This document shows, one piece after another, positions 5,757 through 31,323 of a stretch of DNA of 64,000 nt. The stretch lies in assembly GCA_002269645.1 (NCBI GenBank), contig NIVC01002679.1, positions 86,061 through 150,060 of the forward strand, read 5' to 3'. Made by a program: the position numbers and the translations under genes. The notes beneath the pieces were generated by a model that was not told the origin of the DNA, did no database searches, and worked only from the letters and a program-made list of their open reading frames with translations. Position 1 is the first letter of the stretch. Each line of letters opens with the position of its first letter. Source of the stretch: Macrostomum lignano. Taxonomy: Eukaryota.

Positions 5757-6918
5757 CTAGTTTGTCAAGCTTCTAGTCTAGTCTGTCAAGCTTCTAGTCT
5801 AGTCTGTCAAGCTTCTAGTCTAGTCTGTCAAGCTTCTAGTCTAGTCTGTCAAGCTTCTAGTCTAGTCTGTCAAGCTTCTAGTCTAGTCTGTCAAGCTTCT
5901 AGTCTAGTCTGTCAAGCTTCTAGTCTAGTCTGTCAAGCTTCTAGTCTAGTCTGTCAAGCTTCTAGTCTAGTCTGTCAAGCTTCTAGTCTAGTCTGTCAAG
6001 CTTCTAGTCTAGTCTGTCAAGCTTCTAGTCTAGTCTGTCAAGCTTCTAGTCTAGTCTGTCAAGCTTCTAGTCTAGTCTGTCAAGCTTCTAGTCTAGTCTG
6101 TCAAGCTTCTAGTCTAGTCTGTCAAGCTTCTAGTCTAGTCTGTCAAGCTTCTAGTCTAGTCTGTCAAGCTTCTAGTCTAGTCTGTCAAGCTTCTAGTCTA
6201 GTCTGTCAAGCTTCTAGTCTAGTCTGTCAAGCTTCTAGTCTAGTCTGTCAAGCTTCTAGTCTAGTCTGTCAAGCTTCTAGTCTAGTCTGTCAAGCTTCTA
6301 GTCTAGTCTGTCAAGCTTCTAGTCTAGTCTGTCAAGCTTCTAGTCTAGTCTGTCAAGCTTCTAGTCTAGTCTGTCAAGCTTCTAGTCTAGTCTGTCAAGC
6401 TTCTAGTCTAGTCTGTCAAGCTTCTAGTCTAGTCTGTCAAGCTTCTAGTCTAGTCTGTCAAGCTTCTAGTCTAGTCTGTCAAGCTTCTAGTCTAGTCTGT
6501 CAAGCTTCTAGTCTAGTCTGTCAAGCTTCTAGTCTAGTCTGTCAAGCTTCTAGTCTAGTCTGTCAAGCTTCTAGTCTAGTCTGTCAAGCTTCTAGTCTAG
6601 TCTGTCAAGCTTCTAGTCTAGTCTGTCAAGCTTCTAGTCTAGTCTGTCAAGCTTCTAGTCTAGTCTGTCAAGCTTCTAGTCTAGTCTGTCAAGCTTCTAG
6701 TCTAGTCTGTCAAGCTTCTAGTCTGTTAAGTTCTTAGTCTAGTCTGTTAAGTTCCTAGTCTAGTCTGTCAAGCTTCTAAATTGTCAAGCTTCTATAGTCT
6801 GTCAAGCTTCTAGTCTGTTAAGTTCCTATTCTGTCAAGCTTCTAGTCTGTTAAGTTCCTAGTCTAGTCTGTCAAGCTTCTAGTCTGTCAAGCTTCTATAG
6901 TCTGTCAAGCTTCTAGTC
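5757..6918. repeat. 21-bp minisatellite (TCTAGTCTAGTCTGTCAAGCT), near-perfect
   Basis: About 45 identical units, then a degenerate right end. Confidence 0.98.
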
Positions 6919-7614
6919 TCGAGCTCCATAGATCTAGGTATCTGGAGTTTGGAGACCCATTCCCCTACACTAGGCATGCTTTGTTAAACTCCAACTACGG
7001 ACTGTGACAGTGCCAGAACTCCATGACCAAAGTTACCAAAAGCTGTGGACGGGGGGGAGGCGGGTGAGGTGATCGAGGCATGAGGCTTTTTGGGGCGGGT
7101 TGGTTGTTGTAAGTGAGCTAAAATAAGCTTTATAACAATATCAGGCCATAGATAACAAGTGAGGGGACATGCACCCTGCACAAATGCACAGTCAGTCAGT
7201 CACAGACTAAGCACGTGATAAATATTATAAACCTTTAACTATATAAAAAATATGCATATACTATACGATTACAAAACAAGCCTCTTGTAGTGGAAAAAGA
7301 GGACCCTGGAGTACCTTACTGGTATTGATATTTGCACCTCGATTTATCTTACCTTCTAATACGAAAATTTATATCTTTATCAAGTGAAATAATAAAACCA
7401 AGAAGTCAGGCTTATATTTCCGTCCGCTCTGTCTCATTTTAGCGCTTGGCCTTTGAGTTTTTGGTACCTGGTAGGCAAGTCCATAAGGCAATAACTGGGT
7501 GCTGTTGGGTTTCCGACTGGAGACCCATTAGAGATAAGGGTGGTGAAGTGTGATAAGCATTGTATAGATATCTAGATAGCATATAAAAGTTTAACATCCA
7601 TGCTTTGACTTCAA

Positions 7615-9417
7615 TGATAGAACCTCACCCTTCAAAATCGATAGTCTATGTCTAGAATACCACCCTTCAAATTTGATAGTCCATCTCTAGAACCTCACCC
7701 TTCAAAATCGATAGTCCATCTCTAGAATCCCAACCTTCAAAATCGATAGTCCATCTTTAGAATCCCACCCTTCAAAAACCGATAGTCCATCTCTAGAATC
7801 ACCCTGGCACCCTTTAAAATCAATAGTCTATGTCTAGAATACCACCCTTCAAAATCGATAATCTATCTAGAACCTCACCCTTTAAATTTGATAGTCCATC
7901 TCTAGAACCTCACCCTTCAAAATCGATAGTCCATCTCTAGAATCCCAACCTTCAAAATCGATAGTCCATCTTTAGAATCCCACCCTTCAAAAACCGATAG
8001 TCCATCTCTAGAATCACCCTGGCACCCTTTAAAATCAATAGTCTATGTCTAGAATTCTAGAATATCACCCTTCAAAATCGATAGTCTATCTCTGGAATAT
8101 CACCCTTCAAAATCGATAGTCTATGTCTAGAATACCACCCTTCAAATTTGATAGTCTATCTCTAGAACCTCACCCTTCAAAATCGATAGTCCATCTCTAG
8201 AATCCCAACCTTCAAAATCGATAGTCCATCTTTAGAATCCCACCCTTCAAAAACCGATAGTCCATCTCTAGAATCACCCTGGCACCCTTTAAAATCAATA
8301 GTCTATGTCTAGAATACCACCCTTCAAAATCGATAATCTATCTAGAACCTCACCCTTTAAATTCGATAGTCCATCTCTAGAACCTCACCCTTCAAAATCG
8401 ATAGTCCATCTCTAGAATATCACCCTTCAAAATCGATAGTCTATCTCTGGAATATCACCCTTCAAAATCGATAGTCTATGTCTAGAATATCACCCTTCAA
8501 ATTCGATAGTCCATCTCTAGAACCTCACCCTTCAAATTCGATAGTCCATCTCTAGAACCTCACCCTTCAAATTCGATAGTCTATGTCTAGAATCTCACCC
8601 TTCAAAATCGATAGTCCATCTCTAGAACCTCACCCTTCAAAATCGATAATCTATCTAGAATCTCACCCTTCAAAACGATAGTCTATCTCTAGAACCTCAC
8701 CCTTCAAAATCGATAATCTATCTAGAATCTCACCCTTCAAAACCGATAGTCTATCTCTAGAACCTCACCCTTCAAAATCGATAATCTATCTAGAATATCA
8801 CCCTTCAAAACCGATAGTCTATCTCTAGAACCTCACCCTTCAAAATCGATAGTCCATCTCTAGAACCTCACCCTTCAAAATCGATAATCTATCTAGAATC
8901 TCACCCTTCAAAACCGATAGTCTATCTCTAGAACCTCACCCTTCAAAATCGATAATCTATCTAGAATCTCACCCTTCAAAACCGATAGTCTATCTCTAGA
9001 ACCTCACCCTTCAAAATCGATAATCTATCTAGAATATCACCCTTCAAAACCGATAGTCTATCTCTAGAACCTCACCCTTCAAAATCGATAGTCCATCTCT
9101 AGAACCTCACCCTTCAAAATCGATAATCTATCTAGAATCTCACCCTTCAAAACCGATAGTCTATCTCTAGAACCTCACCCTTCAAAATCGATAATCTATC
9201 TAGAATCTCACCCTTCAAAACCGATAGTCTATCTCTAGAACCTCACCCTTCAAAATCGATAATCTATCTAGAATCTCACCCTTCAAAACCGATAGTCTAT
9301 CTCTAGAACCTCACCCTTCAAAATCGATAATCTATCTAGAATATCACCCTTCAAAACCGATAGTCTATCTCTAGAACCTCACCCTTCAAAATCGATAGTC
9401 CATCTCTAGAACCTCAC
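7615..9417. repeat. ~35-bp minisatellite (CTCTAGAACCTCACCCTTCAAAATCGATAGTCCAT) with higher-order structure
   Basis: Direct inspection; abuts EGF exon 3. Confidence 0.97.
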
Positions 9418-9441
9418 CCAAACCCAAGCCCCCGCACTCAC

Positions 9442-9976
9442 CATTGAATCCCAGCGGACAGGAGCAGGCAGTGCCGCCGTCCACAGTGAGGCAGTGGCCG
9501 CCATTCCGGCAGGGACAAAGTGCAGCGGGCTCAGCTTTCAATTCGCACCGGGTGCCCCAGTAGCCAGGCGGACAAGAGCAGACAAATTTGCCAAACCCGT
9601 CTGGCTGGCAGGTGCCAGAATTGGCGCAGGGATTCCCGTCGCAGGGATTCTCAATGACAGCTTCGTCGCACAGTTTGCCTCGGTAGCCGGGGACGCAGTC
9701 GCACACGAAGCCGTCTTCGTTGCTGTTATCCAGCCGGCAGGTGCCATTCTTATAGCACGGCCGCTTCTCGCAGATGTTTTTTCGAATTCGAATGCTGCAG
9801 GTCTGGCCGGTGAAGCCAGCAGCGCAGAAGCAGGTCAACCTGCCATCGACTATGCTGGTGGTGCAAGTGGCGCTCGGATGGCACGGGTTTTCCAAGTGGC
9901 AGCGGTCGACAAATTCGCAAAATCGTCCAATAAAACCGACGGGACAGATGCATTTGTAGCGCCGGTTGGCCAAGTC
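9442..9976 (-). CDS. EGF-repeat gene, exon 3
   Basis: Core of ORF 9386..10084. CAG acceptor, DLANRRYKCICPVGFIG... through four more EGF repeats to CPLGFN(G); G|GTGAGT donor. Confidence 0.92.
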
Positions 9977-10109
9977 CTGCTCGGGGAGGGGAGGGAAGTC
10001 TTTGTAGATGGAGAAGAGAACAGATGAGAGAAGACAGTGGAGAGGCGAGGAGAGGGCACCCTGACATCGTCCCATAACAGCCATCGGCGAGGAAATTTTT
10101 GTCCATTCA

Positions 10110-10478: not shown

Positions 10479-10559
10479 CTGAGAGTGTGGGGTGGTGTTA
10501 TTGGTTTTATTCCAAGAGCAATTTGTTGCCAATTTGTTAAAGTATTTCACTTATTTCAG

Positions 10560-11650
10560 CCTGATTTTGGATTCTAATAGCCTAAATTTGGATTCTAATA
10601 GCCCAAATTTGGATTCTAATAGCCTAAATTTGGATTCTAATAGCCTAAATTTGGATTCTAATAGCCTAAATTAGGATTCTAATAGCCTCGTTTTGGATTA
10701 TAATAGCCTAAATTTGGATTCCAATAGCCTAAATTTGGATTCTAATAGCCTAAATTTGGATTCTTATAGCCTAAATTTGGATTCTAATAGCCTAAATTTG
10801 GATTCTTATAGCCTAAATTAGGATTCTAATACTCTAATAGCCTCGTTTTGGATTATAATAGCCTAAATTTGGATTCCAATAGCCTAAATTTGGATTCTAA
10901 TAGCCTAAATTTGGATTCTAATAGCCTAAATTTGGATTCTAATAGCCTAAATTTGGATTCTAATAGCCTAAATTTGGATTCTAATAGCCTAAATTTGGAT
11001 TCTAATAGCCTAAATTTGGATTCTAATAGCCTAAATTTGGATTCTAATAGCCTAAATTTGGATTCTAATAGCCTAAAGTAGGATTCTAATAGCCTAAATT
11101 TGGATTCTAATAGCCTAAATTTGGATTCTAATAGCCTAAATTTGGATTCTAATAGCCTAAATTTGGATTCTAATAGCCTAAATTTGGATTCTAATAGTCT
11201 GAATTTGGATTCTAATAGCCTAAATTAGGATTCTAATAGCCTCGTTTTGGATTCTAATAGCCTGGTTTTGGATTCTAATAGCCTAAATTAGGATTCTAAT
11301 AGCCTCGTTTTGGATTCTAATAGCCTGGTTTTGGATTCTAATAGCCTGGTTTTGGATTCTAATAGCCTGGATTTGGATTCTAATAGCCTGGATTTGGATT
11401 CCAATAGCCTAAATTTGGATTCTATTAGTCTAAATTTGGATTCCAATAGCCTAAATTTGGATTCTAATAGCCTAAATTTGGATTCTAATAGCCTAAATTT
11501 GGATTCTAATGGCCTAGGTTTGGGTTCTAATAGCCTGGATTTGGATTCTAATAGCATCGATTTAGATTCTAATAGCCTCGTTTTGGACTCTAATAGCCTA
11601 GATTTTGGATTCTAATGGCTTAGATATATGGATTCTAATAGCCTGGTTTT
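10560..11650. repeat. 21-bp minisatellite (GGATTCTAATAGCCTAAATTT)
   Basis: Direct inspection. Confidence 0.98.
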
Positions 11651-12730: not shown

Positions 12731-13204
12731 CCTGGTACGTCATGATAAGTTCTGTTAATTCCTAATCGAATGACGTGATTGTGAATCTTAGGATCCAGAG
12801 TTATCCCGATCTGAGACCATGATAGAACTAGAAGATTATGAAATTATCTGTGTTGTGGGTCAGTGTGGCGTGGCTCAGGTTTTGATGCATCCAGATTGGA
12901 TTTGTATTGAGATTCTACAATTCCCTGCCACTATACTGAGTACTATGGCCATATCTAGCTTTCGAATATTGAATAATTAATTGAAGCAGAAAAGATTGCG
13001 CAGACACTTTGCTTGCTTGGCGACGTGATGGGATTTGCATTTTAGCCCATGCACATGCTCAAGGAATTCTTGGCGAGTCTGCAAGATGAGATCTGCGAGA
13101 TTCAGATATGCAGTACAGTATCATTAGTTTTTTGGCAAAAAAATTCAGCTAATGCTGAAACCAATCTTGTTCTTCTGCAAGGCAAAAAGGTCTTTTTTCT
13201 TGGA

Positions 13205-14520
13205 TTCTTCGCGGAACGCCGAATTTCTCTGGGTTCTTCAGGGGGCGCCGAATTTCTCTCGGGTTCTTCAGGGGGCGCCGAATTTCTCTCGGGTTCTTCA
13301 GGGGCCCGAATTTCTCTTGGGTTCTTCAGGGGCCCGAATTTCTCTTGGGTTCTTCAGGGGGCGCCGAATTTCTCTCGGGTTCTTCAGGGGCCCGAATTTC
13401 TCTCGGGTTCTTCAGGGGGCGCCGAATTTCTCTCGGGTTCTTCAGGGCGCGTCGAATTTCTCTGGGTTCTTCAGGGGGCGCCGAATTTCTCTCAGGTTCT
13501 TTAGGGGGCGCCGAATTTCTCTTGGGTTCTTCAGGGGGCGCCGAATTTCTCTCGGGTTCTTCAGGGCGCGTCGAATTTTCTGGGTTCTTCAGGGGCGCCG
13601 AATTTCTCTCGGGTTTTTCAGGGGGCGCCGAATTTCTCTCGGGTTCTTCAGGGGGCGCCGAATTTCTCTTGGGTTCTTCAGGGGGCGCCGAATTTCTCTC
13701 GGGTTCTTCAGGGGGCGCCGAATTTCTCTCGGGTTCTTCAGGGGGCGCCGAATTTCTCTGGGTTCTTCAGGGGGCGCCGAATTTCTCTTGGGTTCTTCAG
13801 GGGGCGCCGAATTTCTCTCGGGTTCTTCAGGGGCGCCGAATTTCTCTCGGGTTCTTCAGGGGCGCCGAATTTCTCTCGGGTTTTTCAGGGGGCGCCGAAT
13901 TTCTCTCGGGTTCTTCAGGGGCGCCGAATTTCTCTCGGGTTTTTCAGGGGGCGCCGAATTTCTCTCGGGTTCTTCAGGGGGCGCCGAATTTCTCTCGGGT
14001 TCTTCAGGGGCGCCGAATTTCTCTCGGGTTTTTCAGGGGGCGCCGAATTTCTCTCGGGTTCTTCAGGGGGCGCCGAATTTCTCTCGGGTTCTTCAGGGGG
14101 CGCCGAATTACTCTGGGTTCTTCAGGGGGCGCCGAATTTCTCTCGGGTTCTTCAGGGGGCGCCGAATTTCTCTCGGGTTCTTCAGGGGGCGCCGAATTAC
14201 TCTCGGGTTATTCAGGGGGCGCCGAATTTCTCTGGGTTCTTCAGGGGGCGCCGAATTTCTCTCGGGTTATTCAGGGGGCGCCTATTCTTTCTTGGATTCT
14301 TCAGAGGGCGCCGAATTTCTCTCGGGTTTTTCAGGGGGCGCCGAATTTCTCTCGGGTTCTTCAGGGGGCGCCGAATTTCTCTCGGGTTCTTCAGGGGGCG
14401 CCGAATTTCTCTCGGGTTCTTCAGGGGGCGCCTATTCTTTCTTGGATTCTTCAGAGGGCGCCGAATTTTTCATGGGTTCCTTCAGGATGTTTTTCCTGGG
14501 TTCTTCAAGGTCACCGACTT
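13205..14520. repeat. 30-bp minisatellite (GGGGGCGCCGAATTTCTCTCGGGTTCTTCA)
   Basis: Direct inspection; explains ORFs 13152..14576 and 13345..14535. Confidence 0.97.
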
Positions 14521-15105
14521 TTTTTGGGTTTTTAAGGGGCATTCGGGTTTTTCAATACGTTCGTTTAATCAGTTAGCTTATCAGTTTAATAACTGCTGTC
14601 ACGTGACTGCATCATGTGATGAGCGCAGACAGTCAGCGGTAGTGAAATGCATTATATGCGAGCGAAATAAGAAAACAGACATGAAGTATATTATAAAGTT
14701 ACATACTAGAAGTTATAAAGTAATACTAGACTGAATTTCGGACATGACAAGTCAAACATTTTGTGCTTCAATTTGGTTAGCGATTCACTTCAGTACAGAA
14801 TTTTTTGCCATAATGAAACAAAATCTTTCACACTAGACTGCTGATTGCTGCTGCTGTTGACAGAACAGAAATGTAACTATGAACTGATGCCTGCTTGAGT
14901 TTTTTATTTTAGCTTCTTCTTTCCGTCTGTCTGCTGCTGTGTGACTTTCTAGAATCTAGGAATATTTGATACAAGACCCAGTTGCTTTCCAATTCCACAC
15001 CAAGTCGTTATTAATAATATATCAATGACTGGTATTAACACAGCCCATAGATACTAAGATACTTCTAGATACTATTATAATGTTAAAGCAAACACTTTCA
15101 CTCAC

Positions 15106-17849: not shown

Positions 17850-18770
17850 CCCACCCATGAGCCACAGAATTTCAGCAATTTCTTCATGAGCCTTAGCATC
17901 TAGCAATTCCCCCGTAATCCTTAGCATCTCAGCAATTCCCCCGTAAGCCTTAGCATCTAGCAATTCCCCCGTAATCCTTAGCATCTCAGCAATTCCCCCG
18001 TAAGCCTTAGCATCTTGCAATTCCCCCGTAAGCCTTAGCATCTCAGCAATTCCCCCGTAATCCTTAGCATCTCAGCAATTCCCCCGTAAGCCTTAGCATC
18101 TCAGCGATTCCCCCGTAATCCTTAGCATCTCAGCGATTCCCCCGTAAGCCTTAGCATCTAGCAATTCCCCCGTAATCCTTAGCATCTCAGCAATTCCCCC
18201 GTAAGCCTTAGCATATAGCAATTCCCCCGTAATCCTTAGCATCTCAGCAATTCCCCCGTAATCCTTAGCATCTCAGCAATTCCCCCGTAAGCCTTAGCAT
18301 CTCAGCAATTCCCCCGTAATCCTTAGCATCTCAGCAATTCCCCCGTAAGCCTTAGCATCTAGCAATTCCCCCGTAATCCTTAGCATCTCAGCAATTCCCC
18401 CGTAAGCCTTAGCATCTAGCAATTCCTCCGTAAGCCTTAACATCTAGCAATTCCCCCGTAAGCCTTAGCATCTAGCAATTCCCCCGTAATCCTTAGCATT
18501 TCAGCAATTCCTCCGTAAGCCTCAGCATCTCAGTGATTCCTCTGTAATCCTTAGCATCTCAGTGATGCAATTCCTCCGTAAGCCTTAGCATCTAGCAGTT
18601 CTCTCAAGGAAATCCTTAGCATCGCAGCAATTCCCCGGAAGCCTTAGCATCTCAGCAATTCCTCCGTAATCCTTAGCATCTCAGTGATTCCCCCGCGAGA
18701 CTTGACATCTCAGCAATTCCCCCAAGAGTTACAGCATTTCAATAATTCCCCCCAAGCCTTAGCAACTCTA
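17850..18770. repeat. ~29-bp minisatellite (ATCTCAGCAATTCCCCCGTAAGCCTTAGC)
   Basis: Direct inspection; same family as 40690-41570. Confidence 0.95.
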
Positions 18771-22326: not shown

Positions 22327-22900
22327 GTATTTACTAAAGAATCACTTCAAAGCTGGCTTATAGGTTTCTGTAAAAGTTATTGTTCCACCATCAAACGGTA
22401 ATTTTGAAGCAAGTAAGGTTGAATTTATTTCGTGCTATTTTTACGGTTTGTTAGATAGATTGATTGGAGTCTAATAGTTGATAAATCTGCTCTTACCATT
22501 ACAAGCTGTATTCAAACTAAAGAAATTATTTTTTTAATTCTTTTGAAAGCATGTAAATTTCATGTACATCTATCTAAAGCTATTAGCTAATCATAAAATT
22601 ATCAGCACAGGAATGTAATTGACAAAATTTAATGTTTATTAAATCGAATACTGTTGCAGTCAAATACCAGTCACACTCCAGGCTGGCAAATTGGTGAAAA
22701 CGCCTAGCAAATTATGTATGTAATGTAAATGTAATTTACTTTAATTTAATGTAATTTAATGTAATTTACATCACATGTATGTAAATGTACTCTTGGCAGC
22801 TGTCTCGCATGAAAATACTCGTAATAGAGCTTCGGATCTATTAATTTCGAATAAATATTTAGCATAGGTCGTGGATCTAGCTCAAATTGTGCCTACTATT

Positions 22901-23143
22901 GCACGCGAAGGCGTATTCAGCATGCCAGTGAAGTATGAGACAGACTAGGCCCATGGGCTAAGGTCTGCGATGCTTCACGCCTGCCCCTATCTTCAGCAGG
23001 TCAAGGCTGGTGGGAGGTCTGCACCCTCTATTTGCCTCTGGCAGCCGCAGACCCCCCCCCACGCTGTCTCGCAAGTCGACCCAGGGTACTCGTCCCCGCG
23101 TGTGTTCAAGGCAGTCCCTAGGGCTGCTGGACAGACTGGGCTC
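22901..23143 (+). ncRNA. HDV-like self-cleaving ribozyme at the retrotransposon 5' end
   Basis: P1 GCACGCG(22901-07)/CGCGTGT(23097-103) with G1-U wobble; P3 GGG/CCC around L3 UACUCGU (23087-93); P1.1 A23088-U23105 and C23089-G23104; P4 hairpin 23106-31; J4/2 C23132-AGA; P2 GACCCA(23078-83)/TGGG-c-TC(23137-43). Confidence 0.8.
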
Positions 23144-23418
23144 CGGCGCTGGCGACCCTATCCAGTGGCTTCGGCCGAATTTGGGTATGCGGGTCTGGCT
23201 CGCCAACCTGCAGGCCGTGGTACTGCTCAACGTACTCTCTAATGCCTAAGGTGTTGACCGTGCCGATGGGCTGGAAGGCCGGGGAGTAGTCCGGTCGCAA
23301 GCGGTCCCCCTCCTGGTGTCGGGCCAGCCTTGAGGGTGCTATTGGCCTACTGCCCGGTCAGGTGGAGCGGCCGGGTGGGTACCGCGCCCCTTTGAGGGTA
23401 GCCCACCAACCTTTTATC

Positions 23419-24939
23419 ATGGCCTTCGAGCCGACTATGGATAAACAAGCTATTTCTAGGGACGGGGACCCTTCTAAACCCCAACCTCAGTCCGAAGGAC
23501 CGGCCGGCCCTGCTGGCAGATCCCAACCGACTGATTCAACTGTGGCAAAGGAAGGACCGGCTGGCTCTGCTGGCAGATCCGACCAGAGCTACCAAACTCA
23601 AAATACCCTAAGACCTGCCAGCTCCGCTGGTGGATCTAAGGGAACCGCGAGCTCTGAGCCTAAAGGACCGGCCAAATCTGGCAGATCCGATGAAGCTCAG
23701 CGGGCTCGGCTTGAGCGCAAACGCGCTAAACAACGCGCCAAAAGGCAGGCCAAGAAGGGAGCTGCGGGGGCCAAAGCGGCGGCGTCCACCATGGATGCTG
23801 AAGCGACTGGAGTCCCAAGGCAACCAGGCGGGCCGGCCGGTGGAAGCTCCAGTAGTTCAGCGGCGGCGCTCCCTGGAGCTGCTGCCGCGGCTGCTGAGGC
23901 CGAAACCACGGCGCAACAAATGGCCACTGCCAACAAGGAGGTTCCTTCGGGAGCTACCTTTGCGGCGAAGGCCAAGGCCAAAATCCCGGGAGTGATCATC
24001 CAAGGTCGCGACCAGGACTGGACCACTGATCAGCTTCAAAAAGTGTGGAGTGCTGTTGACTCCTATCTGATTGAGCTGACTGTCGAGGAGGGAATCTCCA
24101 TCGGCGTTGAGCGGATGGTGCTGCGAAGCACATTCGTTCTTATTGCTCCTAGCAGCGAGGAGGACGCTCGGCGGCTGCTCCAGCGGCTACCGACGGTCTC
24201 CTTGGATGCTGACCTTGGTGGAGCTCTTTTTCTTCGCGAGGGCCAGCGTCCAAAGACGATACCCTATGTGGTTTTCGTCCCTGCTAAGAGCACCGCAGCT
24301 GGACCAGACGTTATTCGCCGGGTCCTACTGCGTCTGAACCCCGACCTCCCTGCTAGTGGACTGGTGTATCACCGCAAAGTCCGCAGGGGGGAGACGGGCA
24401 ACTCAATTGTCCTCGGCCTTTCCAGCACTTGGGCGAGTCGGTACCCTAATGGATCCTCTTTCCAGCTGGGTGCCCTCAAGCTCAAGTTGCGCCGAGGAAA
24501 GTCTGCCAAAGGGAAGGCTACTGCCAACCCCGGCATCTCCGGCAAGAGCGGGGCGCAGTCTAAGGCCCAAGGAAAGGCGCAAGCCGATCCCAAAGCCAAA
24601 GCTGCATCTCGCCCCTCTGCTAGCAGCAGTTCGGCGACCGCGGTAACGGCTCCGGCCGAGCCCCGGGAACCAAACCTGCCAGTCGGAGAAGGAGTTGAGG
24701 ACGAGGCCGGGTCTTCGGAATCCGAGCTCTCCTCGGCCACCTTGGTGGGGTCTGAAGGTAAAGATGCAGGTGAGGAAGCTTCCTCCATCCTGTCATCGGA
24801 GCCTGAGGACTCTGCTGGGGGGCCGGTGGGGGTGAGGAGGCCATGGACGTCGACCAACTCCCATCTCCCAGTCAAGCCCCAGCGGCCTGGGACGAGGACG
24901 ATCTGTTGTCCAAGTCTCCTTGATGGCCCTGGGCTCTAG
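23419..24939 (+). CDS. Retrotransposon ORF1 (gag-like, no zinc knuckle, DUF4780-like core)
   Basis: First ATG at 23419 (MAFEPTMDK...). Basic/Ala-rich N-terminus and a globular core with ...IRRVLLRLNPDLP..., recalled as resembling Loa-clade ORF1. The true C-terminus is probably in another frame (EEAMDVD...DEDDLLSKSP, stop 24921-23). Confidence 0.75.
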   Translation: MAFEPTMDKQAISRDGDPSKPQPQSEGPAGPAGRSQPTDSTVAKEGPAGSAGRSDQSYQTQNTLRPASSAGGSKGTASSEPKGPAKSGRSDEAQRARLERKRAKQRAKRQAKKGAAGAKAAASTMDAEATGVPRQPGGPAGGSSSSSAAALPGAAAAAAEAETTAQQMATANKEVPSGATFAAKAKAKIPGVIIQGRDQDWTTDQLQKVWSAVDSYLIELTVEEGISIGVERMVLRSTFVLIAPSSEEDARRLLQRLPTVSLDADLGGALFLREGQRPKTIPYVVFVPAKSTAAGPDVIRRVLLRLNPDLPASGLVYHRKVRRGETGNSIVLGLSSTWASRYPNGSSFQLGALKLKLRRGKSAKGKATANPGISGKSGAQSKAQGKAQADPKAKAASRPSASSSSATAVTAPAEPREPNLPVGEGVEDEAGSSESELSSATLVGSEGKDAGEEASSILSSEPEDSAGGPVGVRRPWTSTNSHLPVKPQRPGTRTICCPSLLDGPGL

Positions 24940-24962
24940 CCAGATATTGCATTTAATACAGT

Positions 24963-27900
24963 ATGACTAAGCTCCACGCTGCCAAAGGAGCGACATTCTG
25001 TCTGCAAATAAATTTACAGCATTGCGTATCTGCGTCAGTAAATCTGATGAAGATTGCTGAGCTGTACAGGCCAGGCCTCATCCTGATCCAGGAACCCTGG
25101 ATGCGCAACGGTAAGTTGCCCAACATTCCCTCTGGCTACTCTGATTTTTATGTGTGTGGCCCGGGGAACAGCCGCCCTAGAGCGGCTATCCTCGCTGCTA
25201 GCCATCTCCAGGCTTGGCTGAGGACTGATCTCTCTGATGGAGACCTTTGCGTCATCCAATCTAATCATTTCTCTCCGCGTACGTGTCTTGTTGCCTCGGT
25301 TTATATCCCAGGCGACAGAGACCCTGCTCCCGAGAGTTTACTGCGCCTTGCGCAGTACTGCGAGTCCCAGAACGCTGAGCTGTGCTTAGGGGGCGACCTC
25401 AACGCGCACCACAAGCACTGGGGCAGCAAAGATACCAACACTAGAGGAGAGGAGCTTCTGGCCCTCATCTCTAACACAAACCTCATGCTCTGCAACCGCG
25501 GCAGCACTCCTACCTTTAATAATGGCAGATGGACCGAGGTCCTCGACGCCACACTCGTTACCCCAAGACTCTTTGACAGAGTCAAGGAGTGGAGAGTCTG
25601 GTCTGAGGAGCCCTCCCTGTCTGACCACTGCTTTATCGCCTTTAATATCGCGGACACTAAAACCCAGTCTCCGATCACTTGGAGACGCAATATCCGCAAC
25701 ACTGATTGGGCGGCCTACAAGGCTGCCCTTGATCTGCACCTGCAGGAACTCACGGACTTACGTCCGATTGAGACCTGCGAGGATGTGGATCATATGGCTG
25801 AGACGCTGACAGGTTGCATTATTGCAGCCTACGAAGCGGCTTGTCCTGCTCGCGCCTACAGAGGCAAGACCTCGGCGCCGTGGTGGAACCCGGAGCTGGG
25901 GAAACTCAGGCGGAAGGCCAAAAGCCTTCATCGCCGTGCCATGAAGACCGGAAACCCGGAGGACATGGAGCTTTTCCGGCAAGCCTCCCGCAATTTCAAA
26001 TCTGAAGTGCGCAAGGCCAAGGAATGTAAGTGGCGCCAATTCTGCAATGAATTGGATCAAGACAGACCTACTTCTAGGCTTGTCAAGGCCCTTACAATGG
26101 ACAAAATGTCCAAATTAGCCATGATAAAAAAGATGATGGCTCTCTTACTAAAGACCCTGAAGAAGTGCTTCAGCATATGCTTAGCACATTCTTCCCGAGG
26201 GTACCTACTGCTAGACCGGAGCCCAACCATTCGATGGATGGAGCCACCCTAGCGGCGGGCATTGTCACTGAAGACCTAATCGCTCGTGCGGTCAGAACCT
26301 TCAAACCCTTCAAATCTCCTGGACCTGATGGTATCTACCCTGTTCTCCTTCGTGAAGCAGCCAAGATACCCTCGTTCCTGAGACTCACCCGCAATCTTAT
26401 GCGGGCCTCTATCCAGCTGGGATACGTTCCCAAAAGCTGGACTGAAGCTCGAGTAGTCTTTATTCCCAAACCTGGGAAGGGTGACTACCAAAGCGTCAAG
26501 GCCTTCCGGCCAATTAGCTTAACGTCAGCAATGCTTAAGCTCACTGAGAGGCTTATTCTCTGGCGGCTGCTCTCCTGCGAGCTGACAGCGATGCCCCTCA
26601 GCAATAATCAGCACGCCTTCCGTACCGGGAGGTCGACTGACAGCGCCCTGCATGCGATTGTCGAAAAGATTGAACGGGCGGTACTGGGTGACGGTTACGC
26701 CCTGGCTCTCTTTCTTGACATTGTTGGCGCCTTCGACAACGTTATCTTTGAAGCGTTTCAGAGGGCCCTTCAAAATCGCAAAGCTCATGCTACCCTCATA
26801 CGGTGGATCATGTACATGATCTCCAACCGTACGGTCACTGCCCAACTTCTTGGGCAAACTGCCTCCACCAGAGTCTGTAAGGGTGGACCCCAAGGCGGAG
26901 TCCTCACCCCGACGCTCTGGAACCTGGTCATGGACGCTCTTCTGAGTGACTCCCGACCTGACCCCGTCTTCAAAGTCGGGTATGCTGATGACGTCACGGC
27001 CATTGTGGCAGGACCGTCTCCCAGCACGCTCAGGGATCTGATGCAGAGCTTTATCCGCAAAGCAGAATCCTGGGCCAATGACAATGGTTTGGAACTCTCT
27101 GAGCCCAAAACCGTTGCCATTATGTTTACCAGCAGACTACGCTGGAACATACGTCCTCTGCAGCTCTACGGCAGAGATATTGCCTTCGCGCACCAGACCA
27201 GATGTCTCGGGGTCACACTTGACCACCGGCTCAACTGGTCCTTCCACGTGAAAGCAAAAGCTAAGCGTGCCTCAGCCATCCTGGCCCAGCTCCGACGAGC
27301 ACTTGGCACTTCTTGGGGTCTATCCCCAAAGCGGCTTTGGTGGATCTATACTTCCGTAGTTAGACCTGCCATTACGTACGCCTCTGTTGTCTGGGTTAGC
27401 GCTACCCAGGTCAAAAGCCATGCAGACCTGCTCAACACGATCCAAGGCAGAGCGTGTAGGCTCATCTGCAACGCCACCAGGTCCACGCCCTTTGCTGGCA
27501 TGGGGGCCTTTCTTAATCTTCCGCCTCTTGACCTCTTCATCAGGGGTGAGGCGGCTAGAACGACGCGGCGTCTAATTGATGCCGGCGTCAAATTCATTTA
27601 CATGAGAGCACCTGCTAAGCGGAACCTTGTCCCGCATAGCGATCTGTGCCTCAACTTTCTCAACGAGTGTCAGGCCAATCGCGTCTTCACCGATGGCATT
27701 GCCTCAACGCTCAACCTGAGACAGCGCTACTCCGTAGCTATCGACTCGCGCGATAACATCAATGACCATTGGAACCCTGGTGAGCTTCATTGCTACACCG
27801 ACGGTTCTAAGCAGTCAGCCAACACCGGCTTTGGTGTTGGAATCTTTCTGAACGGGAGGGTCATCGCTACCCACGCTCAATACACTGGGGTCAACTCCAG

Positions 27901-28701
27901 TGTTTTCCAAAATGAAGTTCTGGCCATCAGCTCCTGCACTGCAGAGCTTCTCGCCACTGGCGTTACTGGTAAGAACATCATTTTCCATTCGGACAGCCAA
28001 GCTGCCTTGCACGCCATCAGTGGCTGCAGCACCAACTCTGCTACAGTCCTTGACTGTATCAAACTCCTCAATGTGTTGGGTTCCGCCAACAAAATTACCC
28101 TTAAGTGGGTTCCGGGGCATGTGGGGATCCGAGGAAATGAGTTGGCTGACACCCTTGCAAAAGTTGGTGCCTCCGGCTCCTCTCTCGGCCCCGAACCTCT
28201 TGTCCCGATCCTGGCTGTGTCATCGACTCGCGCATCAAAGCGTGGATCAGGACTCAGCACCGCTCGACTTGGGCGAACCGCACGAACTGCAGGCAATCCA
28301 GAGGCGCTGTCCCTCAGCCCTCTCACCAGCTCCGGAAGCTCCTCTTGCGCCTCTCGCGCAGAGACATCCGGGCTGCCACCATGACCCTCTCTGGTCACGG
28401 CTGCTTCTCCAGGCACCAGTACCTGCAGGGCAACGCCACCAACGCCACCTGTAGTTTCTGCAACTCAGGTGACGAAACCGCTGAGCATTTCGTCAGCATC
28501 TGTCCCGCCTTCACGCGGGCCAGACTCACTTACCTCGGGCCACACACATCTATTACTGAAGCGTGCAAACCCGAAAACTTTAATCAGCTCATGCGCTACC
28601 TTCGGGCCACCCGCAGGGCTGAACTCTCCTTTCCAGAGAGCACCATAGCTGCTGGCGACACTGGGGGACCTCCCTGGGCGGCGCCAACCCTCCGTCCATA
28701 G
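24963..28701 (+). CDS. Retrotransposon ORF2: APE endonuclease - RT - RNase H - CCHC finger (two 1-nt frame breaks)
   Basis: APE motifs QINLQH, IQEPW, GGDLNAHH, SDH; RT motifs GGPQGGVLTP, GYADD; RNase H motifs YTDGSK, SDSQAAL, WVPGHVGIRGNELAD; CSFC-x8-H-x4-C. Adding one A at 26126-31 and one C at 28210-11 gives a single 1246-aa frame. Confidence 0.95.
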
Positions 28702-29575
28702 CGACGCGTCGGCCGTTCAGGGACTAGCGGAATGGGCGCCCGCGCCTTCCCGCTGTGTCCCCTCCGGGACAGCCCTGCAGCTAAGTCAAGTAAGTCAAGT
28801 GCCTACTATTAATTTTCATAGATAAAAAATGCTTCTATTCATTTTTTCTATCCATCCAATATATCGCGTTCGGTTCCGGGCGTCCAAAAAAATCAGAGTG
28901 TCAAAAATTTTGTGTTGTTTCATATATTTCTTAACCGCTATGTAGCAAGTTGTCAACAGCTAGCAAGAATTCTCCTGGATAAATACGCCGAATTTGGGGG
29001 AACATCAATCAAATCATGTCGGCATAAAACAAAAACGACCCATTTACCGTAAGAGTTGAATAAGAATAGAAAAAACTTTTTGATAACATTAACTACTTGC
29101 AGTAGTGATGCTCGAGGAAGTACGTTTCGCTTTGGCTTTTGAACAAATGAAGAAACTTCCGGACCTATTAAAAGCGCAAGCCATCAAAAACTGGAAACTT
29201 GTCATAATTTCAAAGGGATTTGAGAGCAAGCTAGGTAAGACATTAGGATCCGATTGATGCCATGGATACGAGTTAGAAGAATATAGCATTTTGGGTCGGC
29301 TCATTGGCCAAATCAATATTGGATGTAATTAATTAGCACAATGCTTTCATAAGGCAGAAAGTCTAGCGATTGAGGTCTATTCCAGTAAATTTAGTAGGGC
29401 AAAACTTAGAAATGTGGTGTCCAAGGAGAGAATTTCAAACTCAGTACAAGTAAATAGCACGAGCGTATAGAGAACACTAATTATTGCTGTCACAAACTTA
29501 GGCATTAGGTTTTTCGGTGCTATGTACTATTAATCCCAATTCGCAAAAGTATATTCATAAAGTTATCACAATCAG

Positions 29576-31323
29576 TTAAGGCTTGTTCAGATCCTTGCAA
29601 AAACGGTTGCACTGGTGCGTGCCAAAGAACTCTTTGATGCCGTCCGCACCAAGGTTCGTTGGATGGTACCGTGTGACGTCCTTGCAGTGGATTGCCGGGT
29701 CAGTCATCCAGATCTGCGGCTTCGAGTTTCCGGACGACTTTCGGATGCAGCCCTGAAGTAGGATATGTGATGGTTTTGCTATACAGCAAATGCTGAAAAG
29801 TGTTATGAACAGATCAGTGCATGGTATAAAAAGAGAACAACCTGAAGGTCCACAACGATCAGAAAGCCTTTAGTTGCGTTCCAAGTCCAGTGCGAGAATG
29901 CCGTGATGTAATCCAATACCTCGGGCTCAATTCCATACTTCTTCATCTCGTCAGCGCGCCTCTCCACAGTGTAGTTTAGGTTGTTTGTAAACTTCACAAA
30001 CAGAGCGTCCTTCCCCATGAACTCTTCGCACGTCATTGTTCTGCTGGATGGTTGGCTGAGAACAAGCGTCTTTGTTGTAATGAACTTGATCTCGATACCG
30101 CTGGGCGTTGACTTACTGAACTCGGTGGCAAGAAAGGCTGCGATTGTTTGCACCTCGCATGACGAATTGCATCTGTCCAGGATTTTATCGTGCTTATTCA
30201 TACTTTTTGGCTCTTTTAGTACCATTTGCTGGTCGGAAGATGGACTGTCGCCAGAATAGTGCTCCCCAAAATCTGCCAACAGTGCATAAAACGCAAGCCT
30301 TTCTGCACCCTGGGCAAAAGGACTTTCGGATATCCTGACTTTTACGGAGCTGCCGTGCTCCTGTTTAATAGCTTTGTCGTCAATGATACAAGCAATTGAA
30401 GATGGAACAACAAACTCCAAAAAGTGGCCTACATTCACAGGCCTTTTTGACCAGTCTGGAATCTCCGGTTTCAACGCAACTTCAGGCAGATTTTTGGGGC
30501 AAGCGACCAACTTGGAATTTTCTACGTTTCGTTCGACTGAAGTGGCGATCGATTGAATAACCGATCCAGCTATCTGCTCAATTCCTGCCACTTCAAAGTG
30601 CTCAATTGTTCTACCGTAGGCGATGGCAAACTTGATCAGCATTTGCGCTGTTGACTTGTTGATCTCTCCAAAGTAATAGTCGATTTTCAGTTTTTTTATT
30701 TTATCGAACAGATAATGCTCCGTGCGACCCTTTGGGTCCCCGTTCGGGTGGCTGTCACCGAGCTCGCTTGTATGATATTCATTTCCGTGGCACGGAGCGT
30801 CGCAGATGTGAAAAATGATCCGCGTGCCTGCGGTTTCTGACCAGTTGAGTTTCGTGGTGGCCTCCAACCCCCCGAACACGTCTTCCGGTGCGTCACCTCC
30901 GCCTGTAGCAGCAATTTTTTCCAGAAAGCTGACGCACTGTTGGCTGTTTTCGCTGAAGTCGAATACTTCAAGCGGAACAGAATCGGTCAAGTCTCGGTAG
31001 GCTACAACGGCAAACCGGATCTTCTCAACAGTCGCCTGATTTTGCTGGCTGCGAACTAGAGTGTTCACTATCTTCTTTATGCTGTCCTTTGTTCCAGCAA
31101 TGTGCCCAGCCATACTGCCAGTGGCGTCGAGTAGAAAGCACATGTCGACACTCCTCGATTGCTTTATTTGGCTCATGGTCTTTTTAATATTGTCCTGCGT
31201 GATGGCCAGCGCCAGCTTGAAGCGTCTGACTTGCTCTTCTTCATCTGTGGGGTCAAGACCAAACTCCACCCCTCCGTTCTCGCAAATGTTGCGCAGTCTC
31301 TTGTTTAGCCGACTTAGGTCCAT
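29576..31323 (-). CDS. vWA-domain alpha-kinase (eEF2K/MHCK-type), catalytically intact, 552 aa
   Basis: Exons 31323-29842 and 29752-29576, 89-bp GT-AG intron. vWA motifs FLLDATGSM, FAVVAYRD, GGGDAPEDV; kinase motifs PFAQGAER, VLKEPK, CEEF, KFTNN, FSHWT, VVDLQ|G, TDPAIH, NLGADG, HQCNRFC. Confidence 0.93.

What the first reader, a model, noticed from the sequence alone, without database searches (positions are those of the whole stretch)
22901..23143. HDV-like self-cleaving ribozyme whose cut site is the first base of a full-length LINE
Seen in sequence: every element of the HDV nested double pseudoknot can be drawn. P1 is 7 bp with the G1-U wobble (G22901-T23103). P3 is GGG/CCC. L3 is UACUCGU, keeping the U20/G25 equivalents. 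P4 is a hairpin, followed by a candidate catalytic C23132 in a CNRA J4/2 and then P2. P1.1 is A-U plus C-G, a compensatory change from HDV's two C-G pairs. The ~170-nt J1/2 folds into two self-contained hairpins (22928-22978; ~23009-23062). Independently, the TSD places the element start at G22901, the predicted cleavage position. Established: R2, RTE, L1Tc and some Loa-group elements use HDV-like ribozymes to release their RNA from read-through transcripts, and R2 ribozymes carry long J1/2 inserts. Inference: this family processes its own 5' end; I know of no description of this particular instance.
Basis: partly seen in the sequence, partly recalled or inferred. Interest (0 to 1): 0.88.

Follow-up and report, generated by a model that had tools for sequence, protein, structure and literature searches.

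The report
HDV-like ribozyme at a flatworm LINE's start
The first ~240 bases of a 5.9-kb retrotransposon, probably from the flatworm Macrostomum lignano, can fold into an HDV-type self-cutting RNA whose predicted cut lies exactly at the element's first base; a distant relative keeps the fold through matching base changes, so this is a credible but unsurprising new example of a known way that such elements trim their own RNA.

Summary
P1 is 22901-22907 paired with 23097-23103, 7 bp with a G-U wobble at the base. P3 is GGG/CCC, L3 is UACUCGU, and P1.1 has 2 bp. A P4 hairpin, a C-containing J4/2 and a 4-bp P2 are all present. An 11-bp target-site duplication puts the element's first base at G22901, which is the predicted cleavage position.

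A fixed HDV-type descriptor matches about 5e-5 of start positions in 1.17 Mb of control sequence. It hits exactly base 1 both here and in the only close relative found (L001, ORF2 58% identical).

Between the two sequences all 15 comparable core pairs stay paired, and 6 of them changed on both sides. Slid registers keep only 0-8 of 15.

The 172-nt J1/2 is a conserved three-hairpin domain, and R2 ribozymes have longer ones. Two distant relatives (L021, L019) carry compact HDV-like candidates that draw sub-threshold Rfam HDV-family hits.

Weak points:
- No Rfam hit on the window itself.
- Only two informative sequences.
- P2 is short.
- The catalytic C is not settled, and there is an alternative 3' closure at 23176-23186.
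- The folding z-score is unremarkable.
- There is no biochemistry.
- This copy's ORF2 has two frameshifts.

Verdict: a real HDV-like 5' ribozyme is likely (about 0.7). It is a new member of a known kind and of moderate interest.

The parts
22890..22900 (+). Upstream copy of the target-site duplication TGCCTACTATT. The predicted scissile bond lies between T22900 and G22901.
   Evidence: an identical 11-mer sits at 28800-28810. The next bases differ (G22901 versus A28811), which fixes the 5' boundary.
22901..22907 (+). P1 5' strand GCACGCG. G22901 is ribozyme position +1 and also the first base of the LINE.
   Evidence: It pairs with 23097-23103 over 7 bp, with a G-U wobble at the base. L001 has GCCUGC paired with GCAGGC, with two double compensatory changes.
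22908..23079 (+). J1/2 peripheral domain of 172 nt with three hairpins: I 22928-22978, II 22979-23001 and III 23005-23065. Possible closing helix between 22910-14 and 23061-65.
   Evidence: L001 shows the same three-hairpin layout, with 11 compensatory pairs in the RNAalifold consensus. The top of hairpin I is 88% identical over 41 nt between the two elements.
23080..23083 (+). P2 5' strand CCCA, directly abutting P3.
   Evidence: It pairs with TGGG 23137-40. L001 has CUCAGA paired with UCUGAG at the same place.
23084..23096 (+). P3 (GGG 23084-86 with CCC 23094-96) enclosing L3, TACTCGT 23087-93.
   Evidence: P3 is identical in L001. In L3, positions 1, 5, 6 and 7 are conserved, and positions 2 and 3 change together with their P1.1 partners.
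23097..23103 (+). P1 3' strand CGCGTGT.
23104..23105 (+). J1/4 bases G and T, which form P1.1 with C23089 and A23088.
   Evidence: L001 has A195 and G196 pairing with U181 and C180, so both pairs changed on both sides.
23106..23130 (+). P4 hairpin: lower stem UCA with UGG, inner stem 23111-17 with 23121-27.
   Evidence: L001 has a different and stronger hairpin at the same place (201-226).
23131..23136 (+). J4/2, ACAGAC. The candidate catalytic base is C23132; C23136 is not excluded.
   Evidence: L001 has AGCUGC here. The assignment of the catalytic C is inference.
23137..23140 (+). P2 3' strand TGGG; this is the 3' end of the ribozyme in the favoured model.
   Evidence: It changes together with P2a in L001.
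23176..23186 (+). Alternative, disfavoured 3' closure: C23176-GAATT followed by TGGGT 23182-86, which could pair with ACCCA 23079-83.
   Evidence: L001 keeps 'GGGU' at the aligned site although its P2a changed, so there is no covariation. In both sequences this GGGU can instead pair with ACCC in the loop of a conserved downstream hairpin (window 23155-58).
22901..28799 (+). The non-LTR retrotransposon. It has a 5' UTR of 518 nt and ORF1 at 23419-24939. ORF2 (APE, RT, RNase H and a C-terminal Cys/His motif) is split into 24963-26252, 26165-28384 and 28345-28701. The 3' end is (TAAGTCAAG)x2 at 28782-28799.
28800..28810 (+). Downstream copy of the target-site duplication.

Best explanation
Bases 22901 to about 23140 encode an HDV-like (nested double-pseudoknot) self-cleaving ribozyme. 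It forms the extreme 5' end of an APE/RT/RNase H LINE, probably in Macrostomum lignano.

Proposed mechanism:
1. Inferred: the element is transcribed as part of a longer read-through RNA, or from its own promoter with upstream run-in.
2. Shown (sequence): the RNA can fold so that P1 (22901-07 with 23097-103), P3/L3, P1.1, P4 and P2 build the HDV-type core.
3. Shown (comparison with L001): a conserved, structured 172-nt J1/2 domain lies between the P1 and P2 strands. Inferred: it holds P1 and P2 together.
4. Inferred: a cytosine in J4/2, most likely C23132, catalyses cleavage of the T22900-G22901 bond. This leaves a 5'-OH on G22901.
5. Inferred: the trimmed RNA is the template for target-primed reverse transcription. 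Full-length insertions therefore begin exactly at G+1, directly after the target-site duplication.
6. Shown: the TSD-defined start of this copy does coincide with ribozyme position +1, and the fold is kept through compensatory substitutions in a relative.
For: (1) All helices are present at the stated coordinates.

(2) The TSD fixes the element start at G22901, which is ribozyme +1.

(3) The descriptor background is 4.8e-5 per position (1.2e-5 for a 7-bp P1) in 1.17 Mb. The window match begins exactly at 22901. In L001 the only match in 13 kb (both strands) begins at base 1 of the contig.

(4) Comparing the window with L001, all 15 alignable core pairs are standard in both although only 17 of 30 paired bases are identical. 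Six pairs changed on both sides. Sliding the 3' partner by 1-4 nt leaves 0-8 of 15 pairs.

(5) L3 keeps its U, C and G positions. The two variable L3 bases change together with their P1.1 partners.

(6) Forcing P1 and P3 costs only 0.3-0.8 kcal/mol relative to the unconstrained nested MFE in both RNAs, before any pseudoknot energy is added. In L001, P1 is part of the MFE itself.

(7) The J1/2 architecture is conserved, with 11 compensatory pairs. R2 ribozymes have J1/2 loops of 216-498 nt (PMC3774820), and a J1/2 helix is known to activate large HDV-like ribozymes (PMC4908430).

(8) The distant relatives L021 and L019 have compact cores upstream of ORF1. These are hit, below threshold, by several Rfam HDV-family models: four for L021 and three for L019. 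For L021 the HDV-F-prausnitzii and drz-agam-1 matches start at its predicted +1 (848), and the HDV_ribozyme match starts at 846.

(9) 5' HDV-like ribozymes are established in R2, R4, Dong, Baggins, RTE and L1Tc (PMC3774820, PMC6765202, PMC3185411).
Against: - No Rfam HDV-family model matches the window at gathering score, nor at E <= 10 on the local region. This is plausibly because of the 172-nt insert and the unmodelled pseudoknots, but it is still a failed test.
- The comparative support rests on one close relative. The descriptor was also written after I had seen the candidate.
- P2 is only 4 bp.
- J4/2 (ACAGAC; AGCUGC in L001) is not the textbook motif, and the catalytic C cannot be fixed.
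- A second possible closure exists at 23176-86.
- The folding z-score is -1.31 for the window, which is not significant; L001 gives -2.59.
- A relaxed descriptor shows no clear enrichment upstream of ORF1 across 84 related loci, so the feature is not obviously general in the wider clade.
- That the L001 contig starts at +1 may simply reflect an assembly break at a repeat boundary.
- This copy is coding-defective.
Confidence: 0.7

Rival explanations
1. Chance resemblance. The 5' UTR is a GC-rich structured leader, for example an internal promoter, a protein-binding site or a translation element. It can be drawn as an HDV fold but does not cleave, and the element's 5' end is set by transcription initiation.
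For: - No Rfam HDV hit.
- z-score of -1.31.
- The loose version of the descriptor, with any L3, matches hundreds of places per 64 kb.
- P2 is short and J4/2 is atypical.
- L1Tc shows that a 5' segment can act as a promoter as well (PMC3383444).
Against: - The strict descriptor hits the exact TSD-defined start, at about a 1e-5 to 5e-5 chance.
- It hits base 1 of L001 independently.
- Six double compensatory changes occur with no broken pair, and slid registers fail.
- L3 and P1.1 co-vary.
Confidence: 0.12
2. A real HDV-like ribozyme, but closed differently. P2 would be ACCCA 23079-83 with TGGGT 23182-86, the catalytic C would be C23176 (J4/2 CGAAUU), and a large multi-hairpin P4 domain would span 23106-23175. 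The ribozyme would then end near 23186 rather than 23143.
For: - One search finds this 5-bp P2, preceded by a more canonical C-G-A-A type junction.
- The compact relatives L021 and L019 close with a 'GGC-UAAA' junction after a long P4.
- L001 has GGCUAAAC-CGGGU at the aligned position.
Against: - In L001, P2a has changed to CUCAGA while the aligned downstream GGGU is unchanged, so that site cannot pair with P2a and shows no covariation. The proximal site does co-vary: TGGG becomes TCTGAG.
- C23175 and C23176 sit in a stable GGC-UUCG-GCC hairpin, which is conserved with a compensatory change as CGC-CUCG-GCG in L001.
- No closing P4 stem is predicted for 23106-23175.
- In both RNAs the GGGU can pair with a conserved ACCC hairpin loop instead.
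Confidence: 0.1
3. A decayed relic. The family once had an active 5' ribozyme, but this copy, or the present M. lignano lineage, has lost catalysis while keeping most of the fold.
For: - ORF2 of this copy has two frameshifts.
- J4/2 differs from the junction seen in L019 and L021.
- Inactive R2 ribozymes in dead elements are documented (sow bug, PMC3774820).
Against: - The TSD is perfect.
- ORF1 is 98% identical to M. lignano protein models from other copies, so the insertion is young.
- No helix is broken.
- The L3 C and G bases, whose substitution coincides with the lack of activity of the sow-bug R2 ribozyme, are intact (PMC3774820).
Confidence: 0.08

Closest known systems
R2 (and R4/Dong) 5' HDV-like ribozymes of insects and other animals
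   Same: - An HDV-type double pseudoknot at the extreme 5' end of a non-LTR element, in sense orientation.
- Cleavage defines the RNA 5' end.
- P3, L3 and P1.1 are the best-conserved part, and P1 evolves by compensatory change.
- J1/2 can be very long: 216-498 nt in silkmoths, where part of it is needed for activity (PMC3774820).
- The R2 protein binds structure inside the extended ribozyme (PMC6765202).
   Different: - R2 has a single ORF, a restriction-like endonuclease and site-specific insertion in 28S rDNA. It is co-transcribed by Pol I and often cleaves upstream, within 28S.
- This element has two ORFs and an APE endonuclease plus RNase H. It sits in ordinary repeat-rich DNA and has an 11-bp TSD. 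Its predicted cut is exactly at the element junction.
Baggins and RTE HDV-like ribozymes (drz-Agam-type)
   Same: - Dispersed APE-type LINEs with a 5' HDV-like ribozyme, thought to release the element from read-through transcripts (PMC6765202).
- Large Agam-2-type ribozymes are activated by a helix (P1.2) in J1/2 (PMC4908430).
   Different: - Membership of the same LINE clade was not tested, as no reference library was available.
- No Rfam drz-agam model hits the window.
- The J1/2 here is a conserved three-hairpin domain, not a single helix.
L1Tc ribozyme (L1TcRz / Pr77) of trypanosomatids
   Same: - An RNase H-bearing APE LINE whose first bases are an HDV-like ribozyme cleaving at +1.
- A conformational switch away from the ribozyme fold is described for it (PMC3185411, PMC4035085).
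- The same segment doubles as an internal promoter (PMC3383444).
   Different: - L1TcRz is compact (77 nt) and starts with C1, and it is found in a protist host.
- No sequence similarity to it was found.
- Promoter activity here is unknown.
Hepatitis delta virus genomic and antigenomic ribozymes
   Same: - Helix order and topology.
- 7-bp P1 with a G-U wobble at the cleavage site, 3-bp P3, 7-nt L3 and 2-bp P1.1.
- P2 stacked directly against P3, and a cytosine in J4/2.
   Different: - Host and context differ: a cellular retrotransposon, not a circular viral RNA.
- A 172-nt insert lies in J1/2.
- One P1.1 pair is A-U.
- P2 is 4 bp.
- The Rfam HDV_ribozyme model does not match the window.

Membership tests
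HDV-like self-cleaving ribozymes | Nested double-pseudoknot strand order: P1a, J1/2, P2a, P3a, L3, P3b, P1b, P1.1, P4, J4/2, P2b. | tested here: met
   All strands lie in the required order at 22901-23140.
HDV-like self-cleaving ribozymes | A P1 of about 7 bp that begins at the cleavage site, typically with a G-U wobble at its base. | tested here: met
   7 bp, with the G22901-U23103 wobble. L001 has 6 bp, with G-C at the base.
HDV-like self-cleaving ribozymes | A 3-bp P3 closing a 7-8 nt L3 with conserved U, C and G positions. The L3 C and G are the conserved sites whose substitution marks the inactive sow-bug R2 ribozyme (PMC3774820). | tested here: met
   GGG/CCC with UACUCGU. L001 has UCUCCGU.
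HDV-like self-cleaving ribozymes | A P1.1 mini-helix between L3 and the two bases that follow P1b. | tested here: met
   A-U plus C-G in the window, and C-G plus U-A in L001. Both pairs are compensatory.
HDV-like self-cleaving ribozymes | A P2 helix whose 5' strand abuts P3 and whose 3' strand follows J4/2. | tested here: met
   CCCA with UGGG (4 bp, which is weak). L001 has 6 bp, two of them compensatory. An alternative 5-bp partner at 23182-86 is noted.
HDV-like self-cleaving ribozymes | A catalytic cytosine in J4/2, immediately after P4. | tested here: inconclusive
   C23132 (in CAGA) and C23136 are both available. L001 offers C228 or C231 in AGCUGC. Nested folds can pair C23132. The choice is inference.
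HDV-like self-cleaving ribozymes | A match to a curated covariance model of an HDV-type family (Rfam RF00094, RF01787, RF01788, RF02682 and related). | tested here: not met
   no hit on the window, even at E <= 10. The compact relatives L021 (25.7 bits, E = 0.004) and L019 (23.4 bits) get sub-threshold hits. The 172-nt J1/2 insert is the likely cause for the window.
HDV-like self-cleaving ribozymes | Covariation across homologues that supports the helices. | tested here: met
   15 of 15 core pairs kept, 6 of them compensatory. However, only two sequences were compared.
HDV-like self-cleaving ribozymes | Divalent-ion-dependent self-scission that yields a 5'-OH and a 2',3'-cyclic phosphate. | not testable with these tools
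   Needs in vitro transcription and cleavage assays.
LINE 5'-end processing by a ribozyme (R2/R4/Dong/Baggins/RTE/L1Tc type) | The ribozyme occupies the extreme 5' end of the element, in sense orientation, upstream of the first ORF. | tested here: met
   the ribozyme is at 22901-23140, ORF1 starts at 23419, and APE/RT/RNase H lie downstream.
LINE 5'-end processing by a ribozyme (R2/R4/Dong/Baggins/RTE/L1Tc type) | Full-length insertions begin at the cleavage site. | tested here: met
   the TSD boundary equals +1 for this copy; the L001 contig begins at the homologous G, which is suggestive only. Other M. lignano copies were not available.
LINE 5'-end processing by a ribozyme (R2/R4/Dong/Baggins/RTE/L1Tc type) | The element RNA arises from co-transcripts with upstream host sequence. 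| not testable with these tools
   No expression data were available.
RNase H-bearing APE LINEs (I / Loa / Ingi-type superfamily) | Two ORFs, with ORF2 carrying APE, RT and RNase H followed by a C-terminal Cys/His motif, and a short tandem repeat at the 3' end. | tested here: met
   The exact clade (Loa or another) was not determined, because no reference set was available.

The most novel reading that the evidence does not exclude
The ribozyme has a built-in strand-exchange switch. Four short segments change in step between the window and L001:
- element positions 3-6 (ACGC in the window, CUGC in L001);
- positions 11-14 (GCGU / GCAG);
- a 3' J1/2 strand (ACGC at 23061-64 / CUGC at L001 159-162);
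- the centre of P1b (GCGU at 23098-101 / GCAG at L001 189-192).

This allows two folds. The active fold has P1 plus a J1/2 closing helix. The alternative fold has a 5' terminal hairpin plus a hairpin that sequesters P1b.

The 5' hairpin could act as a temporary placeholder. It would shield P1a from arbitrary upstream flanks while the 170-nt J1/2 is being transcribed, or it could switch the RNA from 'cleave' to another role after cutting. The near-invariant top of J1/2 hairpin I would be a protein- or tertiary-contact site.
Probability: 0.2. Interest if true: 0.6.

Novelty: new member of a known kind. Interest (0 to 1): 0.4.

Why it matters
If confirmed, this extends 5' HDV-like ribozymes to a dispersed, two-ORF, RNase H-bearing LINE of a free-living flatworm, Macrostomum. 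No ribozyme of this kind is described for that genus in the searched literature.

It would also give a second natural class, besides R2, with a large and conserved J1/2 domain. M. lignano is a transgenic laboratory model. Questions that are hard to address in R2 hosts could therefore be tested in vivo:
- whether LINE expression relies on read-through transcription plus self-cleavage;
- what the J1/2 domain binds;
- whether the uncapped 5'-OH RNA is translated.

The general principle is already established, so the finding refines rather than changes the picture.

Tried and rejected
- Rfam at gathering score on the whole window, and at E <= 10 on 22700-23500 and 23060-23200. No HDV-family match; the weak hits (ncrMT1302, mir-62, xrRNA and others) are chance.
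- BLAST of the element against the window. No second copy.
- Metagenome scan with the conserved hairpin-I motif. Nothing found.
- The same motif in the viral collection: nothing. In bacterial genomes: three chance hits inside 225-464 kb bacterial contigs.
- ORF1 homologue searches. Only chimeric M. lignano UniRef models without DNA, or nothing.
- Exact-sequence look-ups of ORF1. Not on record.
- P0001 contig: no DNA available. L002, L003 and L004: either lack the 5' end or are too diverged.
- Eighty metagenome loci encoding 26-36%-identical ORF2s. The strict descriptor is not enriched on the sense strand (19 versus 15 cores). The relaxed descriptor is only about 2-fold enriched upstream. Only L021 and L019 look convincing.
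- The shared 'GGACAGAC' between the window and L021. This 8-mer is common by chance.
- An exhaustive anchored scan timed out and was replaced.
- A TSD for L021 or L019, to fix their 5' ends. Inconclusive.
- The alternative 3' closure at 23176-86, and a model in which L001's GGCUAAAC is its J4/2. Both rejected for lack of a P2 partner or covariation in L001.
- I could not obtain Ruminski et al. 2011 or Webb et al. 2009.
Full report
THE ELEMENT

The finding sits at the 5' end of a 5,899-bp non-LTR retrotransposon, window 22901-28799 on the + strand. The element is bounded by a perfect 11-bp target-site duplication, TGCCTACTATT, at 22890-22900 and 28800-28810. It ends in two copies of TAAGTCAAG.

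- ORF1 runs 23419-24939 and has no Pfam match.
- ORF2 carries an APE endonuclease (PF14529, PF03372), a reverse transcriptase (PF00078) and RNase H (PF00075). An invariant C-terminal Cys/His motif appears in the alignment of relatives.
- tblastn with an intact relative shows that ORF2 here lies in three frames. The frame changes fall near 26111-26192 and 28180-28282. The copy is full-length in layout but coding-defective.
- Protein hits of 79-98% identity to Macrostomum lignano models point to that flatworm, or a very close relative, as the host. The dense minisatellites and metazoan domains in the surrounding window are consistent with an animal genome.

THE OBSERVATION

- P1 is 22901-07 (GCACGCG) paired with 23097-103. 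It has 7 bp, with G22901-U23103 at its base.
- P2 is CCCA 23080-83 with UGGG 23137-40.
- P3 is GGG 23084-86 with CCC 23094-96.
- L3 is UACUCGU.
- P1.1 is A23088-U23105 plus C23089-G23104.
- P4 is a hairpin within 23106-23130.
- J4/2 is ACAGAC and contains C23132.

The base after the upstream TSD copy is G22901, so the predicted scissile bond coincides with the element boundary.

There are four corrections. J1/2 has three hairpins: 22928-78, 22979-23001 and 23005-65. P2 is short. One extra C separates the CNRA motif from P2. The element is not intact.

IS IT MORE THAN CHANCE?

I fixed a descriptor with a 6-7 bp P1, a 3-bp P3, L3 = U...CG., a 2-bp P1.1, a P2 of at least 4 bp abutting P3, and a C in J4/2.

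- On 1.17 Mb of control sequence (both strands of the window and of 84 loci, candidates removed) it gives 56 distinct P1 starts, or 4.8e-5 per position. For a 7-bp P1 it gives 14 starts, or 1.2e-5 per position.
- In the window, one match starts exactly at 22901.
- The descriptor was written after I had seen the candidate, so these are rough odds and not p-values.
- Thermodynamic stability alone is unimpressive: z = -1.31.
- No Rfam HDV-family model matches the window, either at gathering score or at E <= 10 on the local region.

COMPARATIVE EVIDENCE

The only close relative with a 5' UTR that I could obtain is L001. It is a 6.5-kb Logan contig with ORF2 58% identical, both ORFs intact, and the same CTAAGTCAA(A)G 3' end. 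The contig begins at the base homologous to G22901.

The same descriptor finds a single match on both strands of L001, and that match starts at base 1. The helices are:

- P1: GCCUGC with GCAGGC.
- P3: GGG with CCC.
- L3: UCUCCGU.
- P1.1: C-G plus U-A.
- P4: a strong hairpin at 201-226.
- P2: CUCAGA with UCUGAG.

Pair by pair, all 15 comparable core pairs are standard in both RNAs, although only 17 of 30 paired bases are identical. Six pairs changed on both sides: P1 positions 3 and 4, both P1.1 pairs, and two P2 pairs. One pair went from G-U to G-C. Sliding the 3' partners by 1-4 nt leaves only 0-8 of 15 pairs.

Forcing P1 and P3 costs 0.3-0.8 kcal/mol relative to the unconstrained nested optimum in both RNAs, before any P2 or P1.1 energy is counted. 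In L001, P1 is part of the MFE itself.

The limits should be stated plainly. There are only two sequences. The contig start could also be an assembly break at a repeat edge rather than an RNA end.

THE J1/2 DOMAIN

RNAalifold on the two 5' regions recovers the same three hairpins, with 11 compensatory pairs. The top of hairpin I is 88% identical over 41 nt, although the rest of the UTR barely aligns. That suggests a sequence-specific role.

Long J1/2 inserts are precedented. Silkmoth R2 ribozymes have 216-498 nt there, and part of the insert is required for activity (PMC3774820). A J1/2 helix that pinches P1 and P2 together accelerates large HDV-like ribozymes by nearly 1000-fold (PMC4908430). 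The R2 protein binds structure within the extended ribozyme (PMC6765202).

THE 3' HALF IS THE LEAST SECURE PART

A second P2 partner exists: TGGGT at 23182-86, preceded by C23176-GAATT. It would give a 5-bp P2 and a more canonical junction. I disfavour it for four reasons.

- In L001, P2a has changed to CUCAGA, but the aligned downstream motif is still GGGU. That site therefore cannot pair and shows no covariation, whereas the proximal P2b does co-vary.
- C23175 and C23176 lie in a GGC-UUCG-GCC hairpin that L001 conserves as CGC-CUCG-GCG.
- No closing stem is predicted for a 70-nt P4.
- In both RNAs the GGGU can instead pair with ACCC in the loop of a conserved downstream hairpin.

Which cytosine is catalytic remains inference. 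The candidates are C23132 or C23136 in the window, and C228 or C231 in L001.

THE WIDER CLADE

Eighty metagenome loci encode ORF2s that are 26-36% identical. Across them the descriptor shows no general enrichment upstream of ORF1. Two related loci do carry convincing compact candidates.

- L021, 848 to about 969. Four Rfam HDV-type models hit it below threshold, the best at 25.7 bits with E = 0.004. The HDV-F-prausnitzii and drz-agam-1 matches start at 848, HDV_ribozyme at 846, and drz-agam-2-2 at 819.
- L019. The core is at 686-760, with a 7-bp P2. Three HDV-type models hit it, the best at 23.4 bits. A possible P1a lies 107 nt upstream.

HDV-like 5' ribozymes therefore recur among RNase H-bearing LINEs related to this one, but I cannot say that they are universal.

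MECHANISM (INFERRED FROM ESTABLISHED SYSTEMS)

The element is transcribed with upstream sequence. The ribozyme folds and cleaves 5' of G22901. The 5'-OH RNA is then translated and reverse-transcribed, so a full-length insertion starts at G+1, directly after the TSD, which is what is seen here. This is the role shown experimentally for R2, R4, Dong and L1Tc, and proposed for Baggins and RTE (PMC3774820, PMC6765202, PMC3185411).

AN UNEXPLAINED EXTRA

Element positions 3-6, positions 11-14, a 3' J1/2 strand and the centre of P1b are mutually complementary in both RNAs. They changed in step, from ACGC/GCGU in the window to CUGC/GCAG in L001.

This permits an alternative fold with a 5' hairpin plus a hairpin that sequesters P1b. 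That fold is predicted to be 6-8 kcal/mol less stable than the active one. It might guide co-transcriptional folding or act as a switch; a conformational switch is described for the L1Tc ribozyme (PMC4035085). With two sequences this remains a lead only.

NOVELTY AND VERDICT

Full-text searches found no description of ribozymes in Macrostomum, nor of HDV-like ribozymes in flatworm LINEs other than planarian R2 (PMC3774820).

This is a new member of a known kind, with an unusually large conserved J1/2 domain. My confidence that it is a genuine HDV-like 5' ribozyme is about 0.7. Interest is moderate.

I compared the candidate with HDV only through position names and the Rfam models. I did not write out viral sequence.

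Noticed in passing
window 22903-22906, 22911-22914, 23061-23064, 23098-23101; L001 3-6, 11-14, 159-162, 189-192: Four segments are mutually complementary and changed in step between the two elements (ACGC/GCGU versus CUGC/GCAG). This allows an alternative fold with a 5' hairpin plus a hairpin that sequesters P1b, predicted to be 6-8 kcal/mol less stable than the ribozyme fold. It may be a folding guide or a switch.
   Followed up: partly
L021 848 to about 969 (JGI Ga0209678_1001203): A compact HDV-like candidate lies about 1.7 kb upstream of ORF2 in a 31%-identical LINE. P1 is GGCCCTC with GAGGGCT, P3 is ACC with GGT, and P1.1 is CC with GG. A long P4 is followed by a GGCTAAA junction and a bulged 7-bp P2. 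Four Rfam HDV-type models hit it below threshold; the HDV-F-prausnitzii and drz-agam-1 matches start at 848. The element ends in (TAAGG)n.
   Followed up: partly
L019 575-760 (JGI Ga0209122_1001051): This relative of L021 has an HDV-like core: P3 ACC with GGT, L3 GCCTCGT, P4 at 720-743, a GGCTAAAC junction, and a 7-bp P2 (GACCAGC with GCTGGTC). It draws sub-threshold Rfam HDV hits. The best P1a is a G-run 107 nt upstream, where AT-rich flank carrying an old RT fragment gives way to the element.
   Followed up: partly
window 22933-22973; L001 33-73: The upper part of J1/2 hairpin I is 88% identical between elements whose ORF2 proteins are only 58% identical. It is by far the best-conserved UTR block, which suggests a protein-binding site, a tertiary contact or a promoter element.
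   Followed up: partly
window 23140-23186; L001 237-280: A conserved module lies just downstream of the ribozyme. It comprises a hairpin whose loop ACCC (23155-58) can pair with a downstream GGGU (23183-86), plus a C(UUCG)G-type mini-hairpin at 23167-76 that is CGC-CUCG-GCG in L001. This may be a pseudoknot in the 5' UTR.
   Followed up: partly
window 23265-23300 and 23340-23395; L001 about 440-470 and 505-555: Further short 5' UTR blocks are conserved with L001 just before ORF1, for example CCGGGGAGTA.TCCGG and TTGGC.TACTGCC...GGTGGGTAC. Their function is unknown.
   Followed up: no
window 26111-26192 and 28180-28282: ORF2 of this copy changes frame twice relative to the intact relative P0002, so this insertion cannot encode a complete ORF2 protein.
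   Followed up: yes
window 1-64000 (for example 5756-6919, 7618-9419, 10558-11644, 13217-14486, 17889-18768, 40705-41571, 54694-55733): The window is packed with minisatellite arrays of 20-45-bp units and long tetranucleotide runs (47676-48066, 48918-49491, 57027-57862). Several long 'ORFs', for example 13152-14576, are just these repeats.
   Followed up: no
window 29803-31323 (-) and 9386-10084 (-): Host-gene fragments lie near the insertion: an alpha-kinase plus VWA domain ORF about 1 kb downstream on the opposite strand, and an EGF-repeat ORF upstream.
   Followed up: no
window 22718-22768: An AT-rich decamer repeat (ATGTAATTTA, 5 copies) lies about 130 bp upstream of the insertion site. 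It is the source of the weak mir-62 and AfaR Rfam noise.
   Followed up: no
L001 5960-6492: The L001 contig includes about 530 nt of unique 3' flank but no 5' flank at all. If the run is RNA-seq, this asymmetry would itself indicate 5' processing. I could not check the library type.
   Followed up: no
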